Below, piece by piece: positions 933 to 18,900 of a DNA stretch of 64,000 nt (positions are counted from its first letter, which is position 1; every line of letters starts with the position of its first letter). Location: NCBI GenBank assembly GCA_964252035.1, contig OZ176206.1; one strand, written 5' to 3'. Source of the stretch: Podarcis erhardii. Lineage: Eukaryota. Position numbers and translations under genes: made by a program. Under the pieces are notes generated by a model that was not told the DNA's origin, did not search any database, and was given only the letters and a program-made list of their open reading frames with translations.

Positions 933-1031
933 ATGGGAGACAAGCCTATTTGGGAGCAGATTGGTTCCAGCTTTGTACAGCATTACTACCAGTTATTTGA
1001 TACAGACAGGACTCAGTTAGGAGCAATATAC
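933..1031 (+). CDS. NUTF2: Nuclear transport factor 2, coding exon 1 ([33 protein letters not shown])
   Basis: Recognisable NTF2 N-terminus. Acceptor TTTCAG at 906 (exon starts 907), ATG at 933, donor GTAAGT at 1032. Confidence 0.98.
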
Positions 1032-5018: not shown

Positions 5019-5090
5019 ATAGATGCCTCATGCCTTACATGGGAAGGACAACAATTTCAGGGCAAAGCAGCTATTGTTGAAAAACTCTCA
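5019..5090 (+). CDS. NUTF2: NTF2 coding exon 2 ([24 protein letters not shown])
   Basis: TTTTAG acceptor, GTAAGT donor, 72 nt, phase 0. Confidence 0.98.
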
Positions 5091-6624: not shown

Positions 6625-6723
6625 AGCCTTCCCTTTCAGAAAATACAGCACAGTATCACAGCGCAAGACCATCAGCCCACGCCTGACAGCTGTATACTCA
6701 GTATGGTAGTTGGGCAGCTTAAG
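6625..6723 (+). CDS. NUTF2: NTF2 coding exon 3 ([33 protein letters not shown])
   Basis: TTTGCAG acceptor, GTAAGT donor, 99 nt, phase 0. Confidence 0.98.
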
Positions 6724-8617: not shown

Positions 8618-9933
8618 TCCTAGGTGCTGATACACAGTCAGCACCAGTCTGAAACAAGTTTAACGCATGTAGAGTTTGTGTTCTTGTAGAGAGAGTCCTA
8701 TGAAAATGGAATTAGTGAGCTTCAGAAAGATTATTACCCACACTGGATCCACTTCAAACTGATGTTTGTGCGATGTCTGAGAAGTATGGCTGACATGAGT
8801 GTCAGCATCTAGGCTAGCCCACCCAAGAACGAGAGCCTGTTTACAGGTTTTCAAGCCAACATGTGAAGCAGTAATCTAAAAGAATGCACATCTTCTTGTT
8901 ATATACAGAGGCTATGTAGAAGGATTAATGTATGGATGGGGTGATTTTTTATCAATAGAAGATAAAGCTTATATACTTTTTTCTGAATGCTGTTTCAGAA
9001 GCGATGCAAAGAGAAAGGGCTTCACTTCTATGTCTTGCCAGAAATGAATCATGTGCATCTTCCCGGGCACTTTTAGGCAGAATGGGAAAGTGCAGATCAG
9101 TGGTGCTTCTTATATCTTCTGCATGTTGCCCTGTCCAAAAGAGTAGTCAGTGTGATATCACTAGTATTCATTATCAGTGCATACTTGTTGCATCACTTGG
9201 CAGATGAAGGCATTTAGGAAGATAGATAATGGAAAGAAGAAAGTTAATCTCTATCTAAACATAAAGATTACTTAGTGTAGCTTTATAGACAAACACCTGT
9301 TTTCTAATAAGTTTTATGCTAACCTTTCAGAGTTTACTTGGCATCTTCATACTAGTAATAAAATTGAAAGGGCCCAAACTCCATGGTAAAGCAAGTATTT
9401 TGTATGCAGAAGGTTCTAGGTTCAGCCAATGACACCTGCTACTCAAATGCTTGCATGTAGAAGGGATGGGAAAGACCTCAGAGGTGCTGCAAATTGGAAT
9501 TGACAGTGCAAGGTTGGGTGGAAAAATAGTTTGACTGTATAAGGCAGCTTCATCTGTTCAAAGCTTCACAGATAAGCACCTTTAGTTTACAGGCTTTTAG
9601 TTCATGGTTTGCATTTGGCTTATTGTAAGCTATTGGAAGATTTATTGTTGCGAATGAAATTATATGAATCACCCATTACAAAAACCTCCAGGAAAAAAGT
9701 TAATGTAGTCCCTTTAATGTGGACTGAAATTATTTTACTAATTTTTAAGCTTGTCCTTGTCCTTATTGTACTGCTCCAGAGTAATTGGCAGCAGTAGAGG
9801 TACCTGCTGCATGCCTGGAACATTCTTTCTAAGTGCAGTAAATACACTCATAATGGAATCCTGCAAGGAGACTGGCATTCTGTATCTACAGAGCCTATCA
9901 CTTTAGTAATGATTTCTCTCCTGTTCTGCTCAG

Positions 9934-10044
9934 GCAGATGATGACCAAATTCTAGGTTTTCATCAGACCTTTTTGTTGAAAAGCTTACAAGGTGCGTGGG
10001 TGTGCACCAATGAAGTCTTCAGGCTAGCACTCCACAATGTTTAA
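9934..10044 (+). CDS. NUTF2: NTF2 alternative terminal coding exon 4a ([36 protein letters not shown])
   Basis: Pyrimidine-rich acceptor TTTCTCTCCTGTTCTGCTCAG, phase 0, open to TAA. 25/36 aa identical to exon 4b. Usage is inferred, not shown. Confidence 0.8.
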
Positions 10045-12084
10045 CCTCTGGGCGCCTTCTACCTCTGATCTTCACAGTCCTCACTGAGTAAGAAGCACAC
10101 TGCTTGCTCCTGTATCCTAGTTGAACTTGCAGTCTGAACAGCATGGACATTGCTTGTGTGTTCTTAAAGCAGGGTTGAAGAATGAGAATCCTGCTCATCT
10201 CAGGGTTGTGGCTTTTGAAATAAGAAAATGGAGTTTTCCACTTGGAACCAGCTGCTGCGGAATTAATTTAGCATAACTTTTTATGCCAATCAGTTGCTTG
10301 CCTAACATCCTAGATCTAGCATTGCTTAGCAATCTAGGACATCTGTGTGGCACACAATGAACACTCACCTTGTTGTGTTTGAAGCTGTCTGAGCTAGAGC
10401 CTGTAGGTATATCTGTGCAAGATTCCTCTTACATCAGCAAAATTCCCTTAAGCCAAGGTCAGGTTACTACAAATGTGCAGCTCATAAACACAGTTGGGTC
10501 TGGGCTTCAGGACGTTTACTGTTTAAATAACAAGAGTGTTGGAGGAGATGGGAAAGGGAAATGGCAAAGAATGGGTGAGCAAATGTATTTATTTTAGGTT
10601 TTGTTTCAGTTAGGGATGAGGATTAAGACAAAGGCTTCACAGAAAAAGTGGGGTTTTAAGAAGGATTTGGCAGGTGTTTTTAAACTGCAGCAGTAAGAAT
10701 GGCTCTTGGTATGTACAGCATGGGTCTGTGGGGCCTCTACATATACCTGATTTGGTTGCTAATAATCAGAGGGAGAAACAAATGTCGGGGATATGCAAAA
10801 ATACTTTCTTTTTAGGAAGCATTTATATATGTCTCTTCTGTGGCACTCTGAAGCCACTTTTGCCCACTGGTTTCAGCTTCAGTGGAGATTGTGTGTGTGA
10901 ATGGCATGGACAGGTATGCATTAAAGTTTATTTTAGAATCTAGATCTGGTTATTTTTGAGTGCAGAGTGCATTTTTAGTTTTGGAGCCAATCTGCTGAGT
11001 GCAGCCATCTTTTGGATAAGGTGACAGTCAAAGCACAGGTCATAGTTCTAATTATTCAAAATATTTGACATGTAGGTTTGCTTTATCCCTGGCAACAGCA
11101 AGAACAGGGAAGAAGCGTGGCACTTAAGAGCAGTGTGCTGGTGCACACAGGAAGTTTGCATTAAACCATGGGCATAGCCAGGGGAAGCAGGGGCACAACA
11201 AGTAAATAAATGAAAAATACTTAAGTGCCCAATTGCAACACAGATAGCTCAGTCCTGCCCCCCCCCCAGCAATAATGCTTGCCTCCCCTTAAAAAAAAAT
11301 CCTGGCTATGCCCATGCATTAAACCATAGTTTATTCTAAACTATGAGCAAACTAGCTCACAGTTAACTGCTCCATGGAATTCTGCAGAAAAATTATATGG
11401 AGCTGAAACACAACATTATATGTACTGGTATATATTCTAGAAGATGTAAACAAGTCAATAATTACCAGCCTTTCCCCACTGAATGTCACTGTAATGGCTT
11501 TATTCCTCCTATTTGAAGGGAGTCATTCTTATGCCAAATATATTAGTGATTGTTATAAGGACATGGCATTTTTCAAATTTTTGACCACCACTCACCACCC
11601 CATTTTTTTTTTTTTTGCCCTATCTTTTTGTACATTCTAAACCTTATGCCTATTTTGTTGGCTTTAGCAGGACTTAACCTTGAACTCTCAAACACACTAC
11701 TACCTCCTCAAATTGTTGTTAAGGGGTTGTATTGATTCTCAAGAAGCTTATAATTCTCAACTTCCATAAGCATAAACATTATCTGTAGTGCAGCAGTAAT
11801 TGCTACAGTGATAATGGATCATCTCCATGTTTCTACTGCTCTTTGAGTATTGTCCATGCCATTGTAATTTTGCATCATTAAGACCCAAAAATGCATGTCA
11901 GAATCTTGCCTACCTTAATTCATTAGCACAGGGATGACATGATAAATCTGAAAGCTGAATGTTGGTGCAGACAGGTGAAGTATGCATGACAGCATTTGGC
12001 ACCAGCTGCAGGAATTTGCCTTGTTAGACATTTGCTGTAGTAGAGAATTTCTAAAATTTATTTATTTATTTTTTGTCTTCACAG

Positions 12085-12198
12085 GCCGATGAAGATCCTA
12101 TTATGGGATTTCACCAGATATTTCTATTAAAGAACATCAATGATGCTTGGGTTTGCACCAATGACATGTTCAGGCTAGCATTGCACAACTTTGGTTGA
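12085..12198 (+). CDS. NUTF2: NTF2 canonical terminal coding exon 4b ([37 protein letters not shown])
   Basis: TTCACAG acceptor, TGA at 12196-12198. Total 33+24+33+37 = 127 aa, the length of vertebrate NTF2. Confidence 0.98.
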
Positions 12199-18339: not shown

Positions 18340-18900
18340 GCAGGTTGTACGTGCGAGGGGGGCCTCTTCCCGGCCCTCGTTCTCCTTTCTGCGCGCTTCT
18401 GCCTGCTTCGTACACCATCTGTATTTATTCTCTGCTGGGAGAGGCGGAACCCGGACGTCTGGGTACCATTTGCCTGGGGTAAGGAAAGCAATGACCGGAC
18501 CGGAAGCGGAAGTGGGGGCGGAGAAGCGGGGTTTGGCCTGCCCGGGCGGTGGAAGCCGCGGTAGCTGTGGTACTGCTGGCGGACTTGGCGGGGCCCAATG
18601 GCCTCCGCGAGCATCGATATCGAGGACGCGACTCAGCATCTCCGAGACATCCTCAAGCTGGACCGGCCGAGCGGTGGGGCTCTCGGGCCGGGACCCTAAC
18701 AAGGAGGCGGGGGGTTTTCTTGGAAGCAGTTCCTTTGGGGAGTGAGCGGCTGAAATGAGGCTCGTGGTCTCGGGCGGCGGTGCTCCCCTTTGCTCAGCCC
18801 ATCCCGCGTGAGCGGGAAGGCGCCCACTGCGCTGGCAGGAGGGCGGCAGGCGACGGGCGGGCGAAGAGCCCAGGGGGGCGCGATCCTATAGACACGCTTA
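18340..18900 (+). promoter_or_regulatory. EDC4: EDC4 CpG-island promoter with tandem ETS/GABP sites and a GC box
   Basis: CpG-dense. CCGGAAGCGGAAGT at 18500-18513, GGGGCGGAG at 18515-18523, no TATA box seen. Confidence 0.8.
18598..18673 (+). CDS. EDC4: EDC4 exon 1 (MASASIDIEDATQHLRDILKLDRPS-G)
   Basis: ATG at 18598. Donor G|GTGGGG is forced by the in-frame TAA at 18697 and by the phase of exon 2. Confidence 0.9.

What the first reader, a model, noticed from the sequence alone, without database searches (positions are those of the whole stretch)
9934..10044. Hidden duplicated terminal exon of NUTF2 predicts a second NTF2 isoform with an alternative C-terminus
Seen in sequence: 2.1 kb upstream of the canonical last exon (12085) lies a second phase-0 exon with a good acceptor (TTTCTCTCCTGTTCTGCTCAG|GCA). 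It reads [36 protein letters not shown] against canonical [37 protein letters not shown]. The two are 25/36 aa identical with no indels or internal stops. 11 of the 25 identical residues use different synonymous codons, and the flanks share no visible similarity. Inference: an old tandem exon duplication kept under purifying selection and used as a mutually exclusive last exon (126-aa vs 127-aa protein). It is too short to appear in the ORF track. I know of no such exon in mammalian NUTF2. I recall Drosophila Ntf-2 having isoforms that differ in the C-terminal exon, which would make this a parallel design, but that needs checking.
Basis: partly seen in the sequence, partly recalled or inferred. 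Interest (0 to 1): 0.92.

Follow-up and report, generated by a model that had tools for sequence, protein, structure and literature searches.

The report
Conserved alternative NUTF2 exon, already annotated
The lizard NUTF2 gene carries a real, very old duplicate of its last coding exon that gives a second, 126-residue form of nuclear transport factor 2. Public databases already annotate this isoform in lizards, birds, frogs, fishes and sharks, and it is spliced in as a cassette rather than used as a separate last exon.

Summary

It is a functional coding exon.
- It is intact in all eight other sauropsid loci sampled: skink, three snakes, two geckos, turtle and falcon.
- Orthologue dN/dS is 0.04-0.08, and 16 of 21 variable sites are third codon positions. 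The neighbouring intron is only about 50% identical.
- 4a-type peptides from sharks to birds fall on one side of a tree branch, so the duplication predates jawed-vertebrate radiation.
- Two placental mammals (dolphin, vole) lack it.

It is not hidden. The window's exon 1+2+3+4a product is identical to XP_033014822.1, "nuclear transport factor 2 isoform X2 [Lacerta agilis]", and to a Podarcis muralis UniProt entry. Matching isoform X2 models exist in birds, frogs, axolotl, cyprinids and skates or sharks.

It is not a terminal or mutually exclusive exon. Skate and cyprinid RNA-seq contigs read exon 3-4a(stop)-42 to 51 nt-4b. All nine sauropsid loci keep an invariant TGA|GTAAG donor 43-47 nt after the stop. 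That is close enough to the junction to escape nonsense-mediated decay.

I found no paper describing the isoform, and its function is untested.

The parts
933..1031 (+). NUTF2 coding exon 1 (ATG at 933, 33 codons)
   Evidence: Six-frame translation. The spliced product equals P0172 and P0199.
5019..5090 (+). NUTF2 coding exon 2 (24 codons, contains Glu42)
6625..6723 (+). NUTF2 coding exon 3 (33 codons, ends in phase 0 at 6723)
9913..9933 (+). Pyrimidine tract and CAG acceptor of exon 4a
   Evidence: Read. TGCT(C/T)AG|GCAGA is conserved in 9 sauropsid loci.
9934..10044 (+). Coding part of alternative exon 4a (36 codons + TAA)
   Evidence: Intact orthologues in 8 other sauropsid loci. dN/dS 0.04-0.08.
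9934..10087 (+). Full exon 4a as predicted (154 nt cassette exon, stop 43 nt before the junction)
   Evidence: Invariant TGA|GTAAG in 9 loci. The matching exon is 153 nt in skate and 162 nt in cyprinid transcripts. The junction is inferred for this species.
10085..10093 (+). Predicted 5' splice site of exon 4a, TGA|GTAAGA (GT at 10088-10089)
10141..10145 (+). Invariant intronic GCATG, 53 nt into the 4a-4b intron. Candidate RBFOX-type enhancer (inferred).
   Evidence: Invariant column block in alignment A3. Distances 49-55 nt in 8 of 9 loci. In the turtle the script's first match sits 5 nt from the donor, and its copy of the conserved block is seen only in the alignment.
10150..10162 (+). Conserved GU-rich block TTGCTTGTGTGTT next to the GCATG
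   Evidence: Its role is unknown.
12085..12198 (+). Canonical last coding exon 4b (37 codons + TGA). It becomes 3' UTR when 4a is included.

Best explanation
Exon 4a is a functional, protein-coding alternative exon of NUTF2. It arose by tandem duplication of the last coding exon before jawed vertebrates diverged. When it is skipped, exon 3 joins exon 4b and the canonical 127-residue NTF2 is made. When it is included (3' splice site at 9934, predicted 5' splice site at 10087/10088), translation ends at the TAA inside 4a and exon 4b becomes 3' UTR. The result is a 126-residue NTF2 whose last 36 residues are replaced by a homologous segment. The stop lies only 43 nt before the final exon junction, so the mRNA should escape nonsense-mediated decay. 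The substituted segment keeps the RanGDP-contact residues Ala91, Asp92, Asp94, Phe119 and Leu121. It changes Met97 to Leu, position 102 to Thr, Asp117 to Glu, Met118 to Val and the C-terminal Phe-Gly to Val.

Shown: the exon, its conservation, its annotation, and the cassette architecture in skate and cyprinid. Inferred: the 4a-4b junction in this lizard, escape from decay, regulation through the conserved intronic GCAUG, and any functional difference between the isoforms.
For: The sequence and paralogue statistics are. The window's spliced product is identical to P0172, which is XP_033014822.1 (isoform X2, Lacerta agilis), A0A670IK40_PODMU and CAI5782199.1. 4a-type C-termini are annotated in birds, frogs, axolotl, a caecilian, bichir, cyprinids, a salmonid, sharks and skates.

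Intact 4a lies between exon 3 and 4b in a skink, three snakes, two geckos, a turtle and a falcon. Orthologue dN/dS is 0.04-0.08, 16 of 21 variable sites are third positions, and exon identity is 89-96% against about 50% for nearby intron. All 4a peptides sit on one side of a branch with support 93/97.

RNA-seq contigs L005 and L006 (skate) and L007 (cyprinid) read exon 1-2-3-4a-4b, with 42 and 51 nt between the 4a stop and 4b. An invariant TGA|GTAAG lies 43-47 nt after the stop in 9 sauropsid loci, and an invariant GCATG lies about 50 nt further on. Both isoforms match the full Pfam NTF2 domain (114.9 and 119.3 bits). The Ran-contact residue list comes from PMC3549806, citing the 1A2K structure.
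Against: I could not obtain any transcript from this lizard or from any sauropsid, so the 6723^9934 and 10087^12085 junctions are inferred here. The evidence for them is the RefSeq model, conservation, and fish and skate transcripts. The exonic side of the predicted donor (TGA) departs from consensus. Inclusion level and tissue pattern are unknown. No protein-level evidence was seen. The tree rests on only 37 columns.
Confidence: 0.85

Rival explanations
1. One reading: 4a is an alternative terminal exon with its own cleavage and polyadenylation site, used in strict mutual exclusion with 4b.
For: 4a carries its own stop codon, and the protein products are mutually exclusive. I have no sauropsid transcript that excludes a minor polyadenylated form.
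Against: The first AATAAA or ATTAAA after the stop is at 10920, about 875 nt downstream. An invariant GTAAG donor lies 43-47 nt after the stop in 9 loci. Skate and cyprinid mRNAs carry 4a and 4b together. Bombina RefSeq models also splice 4a to 4b.
Confidence: 0.08
2. 4a is a regulatory 'poison' exon. Its inclusion would introduce a premature stop that sends NUTF2 mRNA to nonsense-mediated decay, so the peptide itself would not matter.
For: It is a stop-containing cassette upstream of the normal last exon, with conserved flanking intronic elements.
Against: The stop lies 42-51 nt from the last junction in every species measured, at or below the 50-55 nt rule (the rule is established knowledge). 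Constraint acts on the protein: dN/dS is 0.04-0.08 and synonymous third positions vary freely. The peptide also keeps the NTF2 fold determinants and Ran-contact residues.
Confidence: 0.05
3. 4a is a decaying relic of an exon duplication that annotation pipelines pick up by homology but that is no longer used in squamates.
For: Many bird entries are homology-based predictions. No squamate transcript was seen here.
Against: The frame is intact in all 9 sauropsid loci, with conserved splice sites and dN/dS of 0.04-0.08 over deep divergences (lizard-bird dS 0.67). The adjacent intron has diverged to about 50% identity.
Confidence: 0.02

Closest known systems
RefSeq XP_033014822.1 'nuclear transport factor 2 isoform X2 [Lacerta agilis]' (also UniProt A0A670IK40_PODMU and CAI5782199.1)
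   Same: Identical over all 126 residues to the window's exon 1+2+3+4a product.
   Different: Nothing at the protein level. These are computed models, and I found no experimental characterisation.
NUTF2 isoform X2 models of other non-mammalian vertebrates (Hirundo rustica and 74 Passeriformes, 37 other birds, many frogs, Ambystoma, Carassius gibelio, Amblyraja radiata, Mustelus, Scyliorhinus)
   Same: The same exon in the same position, sharing the diagnostic residues Thr102 and Glu117-Val118 and the loss of the terminal Gly; Gln95 is shared by most but not by the skate, which keeps Pro. Transcripts show the cassette architecture.
   Different: There are 1-9 residue differences. Bombina models use donors inside 4a.
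Canonical mammalian NTF2 (rat, PDB 1OUN/1GY6; RanGDP complex 1A2K)
   Same: Residues 1-90 are nearly identical. The NTF2 fold, Glu42, Asp92, Asp94 and most cavity residues are kept.
   Different: There are 12 changes in the last 37 residues relative to the rat protein, counting the lost terminal Gly. These include Met97Leu (Ran cavity), position 102, which was engineered as M102E in 1JB4, and the C-terminal dipeptide. The two placental loci examined lack the exon.
Tandem-duplicated exon substitution events / mutually exclusive exons (PMC8373072, PMC9741552; listed, read here only as title and start of abstract)
   Same: An ancient tandem exon duplication that gives isoforms differing only in a homologous segment, under strong purifying selection.
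   Different: Exclusivity comes from a stop codon in a cassette exon, not from mutually exclusive splicing, because both exons sit in one mRNA. NUTF2 did not appear in the search listing that returned those papers.
Drosophila Ntf-2 transcripts RA and RB
   Same: The fly NTF2 gene also has a transcript-specific alternative exon. Its functional meaning is described as open (PMC8645118).
   Different: I did not verify that the fly exon is C-terminal or homologous to the one it replaces. Independent origin is likely but was not tested.

Membership tests
NTF2 (Pfam PF02136), RanGDP import factor | Full-length NTF2 domain | tested here: met
   P0172 (4a isoform) scores 114.9 bits over profile positions 1-116 of 116. 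The canonical isoform scores 119.3 bits. E = 1.4e-77 to rat NTF2 structures.
NTF2 (Pfam PF02136), RanGDP import factor | Ran-binding residues: Glu42, Asp92, Asp94 and cavity residues Ala91, Met97, Phe119, Leu121 | tested here: met
   The residue list is from PMC3549806, citing 1A2K. In 4a all are kept except Met97, which becomes Leu. Actual binding was not tested.
Mutually exclusive tandem-duplicated exons | Adjacent homologous exons of the same phase and near-equal length | tested here: met
   36 versus 37 codons, both phase 0, 69% residue identity, 2.1 kb apart.
Mutually exclusive tandem-duplicated exons | The two exons never occur together in one mature mRNA | tested here: not met
   Skate (L005, L006) and cyprinid (L007) transcripts contain 4a followed by 4b. 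For the lizard itself this is inferred from the conserved donor.
Alternative last exon with its own poly(A) site | Poly(A) signal shortly downstream and no 5' splice site | tested here: not met
   No AATAAA or ATTAAA before 10920. Invariant GTAAG donor at 10088.
NMD-inducing poison cassette exon | Stop codon more than 50-55 nt upstream of the last exon junction | tested here: not met
   43 nt in the window, 43-47 nt in eight other sauropsids, 42 nt in skate, 51 nt in cyprinid.
NMD-inducing poison cassette exon | Constraint on the nucleotide sequence rather than on the encoded peptide | tested here: not met
   16 of 21 variable sites are third codon positions, and dN/dS is 0.04-0.08.
RBFOX-regulated cassette exon | Conserved (U)GCAUG in the proximal downstream intron | tested here: inconclusive
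   The GCATG core is invariant in 9 loci, about 50 nt from the donor. The preceding base is A or C, not U.
RBFOX-regulated cassette exon | RBFOX binding and RBFOX-dependent, tissue-specific inclusion | not testable with these tools
   No expression or CLIP data were available.

The most novel reading that the evidence does not exclude
Most jawed vertebrates, but not placental mammals, make a second NTF2 that has never been studied experimentally. Its replaced C-terminal strands (Met97Leu, Thr102, Glu117, Val118, loss of the Phe-Gly end) would alter dimer stability, heterodimer formation or nucleoporin and Ran handling. Its inclusion would be tissue-regulated through the conserved intronic GCAUG/GU-rich element, and a conserved stop-to-junction spacing of 42-51 nt would protect the mRNA from decay.
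Probability: 0.35. Interest if true: 0.5.

Novelty: already known. Interest (0 to 1): 0.3.

Why it matters
As a discovery claim it does not stand, because the isoform is already in RefSeq and UniProt for lizards and many other vertebrates.

Three things remain useful.
- The exon architecture should be described as a stop-carrying cassette exon spliced on to the canonical last exon. The stop-to-junction distance is kept within the decay-safe range from sharks to birds.
- The exon is as constrained as the canonical one over the whole span of jawed vertebrates, yet is missing from the two placental mammals examined. Work on rat, human and yeast NTF2 has therefore overlooked it.
- No paper on it turned up in the searched library, so its biochemistry and expression are open questions that standard assays can address.

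Tried and rejected
- Three locus look-ups were not on record, because only the longest product of a gene is indexed: Sceloporus isoform X3, Chelonia isoform X5 and lamprey isoform X2. I therefore could not test whether the lamprey has two tandem exons. The lamprey peptide groups with the 4b side.
- No identifier was available for a monotreme, marsupial or crocodilian NUTF2 locus, so the point of loss in the mammalian lineage is not resolved.
- Four literature searches found no description of this exon or isoform.
- I did not type the 126-residue spliced protein into any tool. I reached it through a search with the stop-free reading frame around exon 3 and then cluster members.
- The decayed-relic and poison-exon readings were considered and rejected on conservation pattern and stop position.
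- I did not run a structure prediction. The isoform is about 90% identical to solved NTF2, and a monomer model could not address the dimer or Ran interfaces.
- The B10K model P0067, which reads 4a and 4b in one frame, and the Bombina X2 and X3 models were treated as prediction variants, not as evidence about the lizard.

Full report
**Observation.** window:9934-10044 on the + strand reads as 36 codons plus TAA, directly after a pyrimidine tract and CAG. The canonical last coding exon of NUTF2 is at 12085-12198.

The two exons compare as follows:
- 25 of 36 residues and 78 of 108 bases are identical.
- Eleven identical residues use different codons.
- Differences fall 7, 4 and 19 on codon positions 1, 2 and 3.
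- Nei-Gojobori dN is 0.20 with saturated dS, giving a ratio near 0.09.

The flanks do not align. The other coding exons are at 933-1031, 5019-5090 and 6625-6723.

**Is it already known?** I searched with the stop-free reading frame around exon 3. It returned many NTF2 proteins, and sorting them by C-terminus showed a set ending in the 4a-type peptide. These came from several bird clusters, frogs, a caecilian, bichir, cyprinids, gar and sharks. A second search focused on that C-terminus added axolotl, a salmonid and more sharks.

Listing cluster members gave the decisive result. P0172 carries three labels: XP_033014822.1 "nuclear transport factor 2 isoform X2 [Lacerta agilis]", UniProt A0A670IK40 of Podarcis muralis, and CAI5782199.1. 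A script showed that the window's exon 1+2+3+4a translation is identical to P0172 over all 126 residues. It also showed that the 4b version is identical to P0199, the canonical protein of several squamates. So the exon is annotated in lacertid lizards, and the window is probably from one. Isoform X2 entries with the same exon exist for Hirundo rustica, many frogs, Ambystoma, Carassius gibelio, Amblyraja radiata, Mustelus and Scyliorhinus.

**Is it functional?** I fetched genomic NUTF2 loci for a skink, three colubroid snakes, two geckos, a turtle and a falcon. Each has an intact 4a between exon 3 and 4b, with 34-35 of 36 residues identical to the window.
- Pairwise dN/dS among orthologous 4a exons is 0.04-0.08, the same range as for 4b.
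- 16 of 21 variable columns are third codon positions.
- Exon identity to the window is 89-96%, while intron 100-400 nt upstream is about 50% identical.

This is selection on the peptide, not just on RNA.

A tree of last-exon peptides puts all 4a sequences on one side of a branch, with support 93/97 and recovery in 97% of bootstrap trees. That side includes skate, catshark and chimaera. The other side holds all 4b sequences, the separate NUTF2-like paralogue and the lamprey. With only 37 columns this is indicative rather than firm. It agrees with the shared diagnostic residues and with both exons occurring in tandem in cartilaginous and bony fishes. The duplication therefore predates the split of jawed vertebrates.

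The dolphin and vole loci have no trace of 4a between exon 3 and 4b, and no mammalian protein hit carries it. Monotremes, marsupials and crocodilians were not sampled.

**Architecture.** Three contigs assembled from public RNA-seq runs encode the 4a isoform exactly: two from a skate and one from a cyprinid. They are fully spliced and read exon 1, 2, 3, 4a, then 42 nt (skate) or 51 nt (cyprinid), then the complete 4b with its 3' UTR. So 4a is a cassette exon of 153 or 162 nt, and the two exons sit together in one mRNA.

In the nine sauropsid loci the acceptor is conserved. The sequence TGA|GTAAG is invariant 43-47 nt after the stop. In the window the GT is at 10088-10089, which gives a 154-nt exon, 9934-10087. 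The first poly(A) hexamer after the stop is about 875 nt away.

By the established 50-55 nt rule, a stop 42-51 nt before the last junction should not trigger nonsense-mediated decay. That this spacing is kept from skate to falcon suggests it is itself under selection. This last point is inference.

About 50 nt into the next intron lies an invariant GCATG (window 10141-10145), followed by a GU-rich block. This looks like an RBFOX-type downstream enhancer. The usual leading U is missing, and I cannot test binding.

**Protein consequences.** Both isoforms match the whole Pfam NTF2 domain and align end to end with rat NTF2 structures.

According to PMC3549806, which cites the 1A2K complex, Ran Phe72 sits in a cavity lined by Trp41, Leu59, Phe61, Ile64, Leu89, Ala91, Met97, Phe119 and Leu121. 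Glu42, Asp92 and Asp94 surround that cavity. Of the residues encoded by the last exon, 4a keeps Ala91, Asp92, Asp94, Phe119 and Leu121 and changes only Met97, to Leu. RanGDP binding is therefore probably retained.

The changes that recur across vertebrates are:
- Pro95 to Gln (most lineages; the skate 4a keeps Pro)
- position 102 to Thr
- Asp117 to Glu
- Met118 to Val
- an aliphatic residue in place of the final Phe-Gly

Position 102 is the site of the engineered M102E mutant in 1JB4. From memory, that mutant series (84, 102, 118) was made to weaken the dimer. I could not confirm this in the library, so a change in dimerisation or nucleoporin binding is only a hypothesis.

**Literature.** Four searches found no paper on this exon or isoform. 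The searches returned catalogues of human tandem-duplicated exon substitutions without any co-mention of NUTF2. That would be expected if humans lack the exon, as the two placentals sampled do; I did not examine human sequence. The Drosophila parallel is real in outline. PMC8645118 states that Ntf-2 has four annotated transcripts and a transcript-B-specific exon, and that the RA/RB difference is not understood. I did not verify where that exon lies.

**Verdict.** It is not a discovery, because databases already hold the exact isoform. It is also not a terminal or mutually exclusive exon. It is a stop-carrying cassette spliced on to the canonical last exon. The residual interest is that an uncharacterised, deeply conserved second NTF2 exists in most vertebrates and is missing from the two placental mammals examined.

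Noticed in passing
window:2182-2592 (+): A 137-codon open frame in NUTF2 intron 1 whose sequence looks, by my recognition only, like the C-terminal part of a Bov-B/RTE LINE ORF2. This fits a squamate genome.
   Followed up: no
window:~18598-18683: Similarity to the first EDC4 exon of the skink locus (tblastx 1e-9). EDC4 also follows NUTF2 in the skink, falcon and dolphin loci, and a long downstream gene with no domain hit on record follows it in the vole, so the synteny is conserved.
   Followed up: partly
L013:7992-8300 (Microtus ochrogaster): The end of exon 1, then exon 2, exon 3 and exon 4b lie contiguously without introns. This block sits where 4b should be, next to an N and a sequence that looks to me like a B1 SINE, while normal exons 2 and 3 also lie upstream. 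It explains the odd 190-residue model. It could be an assembly artefact or a partial cDNA-mediated conversion.
   Followed up: partly
Proteins P0085, P0099, P0101, P0117, P0091, P0055: A separate 'NUTF2-like' paralogue gene, with a C-terminus ending ...FRLALYNFA in amniotes, is present in geckos, monitor lizard, turtles, marsupials, sharks and gar. It forms its own group in the tree.
   Followed up: partly
Proteins P0102, P0105 (Bombina bombina isoforms X3, X2) and P0067 (Antrostomus): These models join 4a to 4b through donors inside 4a. The result is either an in-frame partial 4a plus 4b, or a frameshifted reading of 4b. They may be real minor splice forms or prediction artefacts.
   Followed up: no
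window:6243-6270 (+): A trinucleotide repeat that reads as poly-Gln or poly-Ser in NUTF2 intron 2, upstream of exon 3.
   Followed up: no
L004:7918-7959 and L013:8492-8545 (minus strand): The NUTF2 3' UTR of the dolphin and the vole share a block that gives a weak spurious tblastn hit to 4a on the opposite strand. It is probably just conserved 3' UTR.
   Followed up: no
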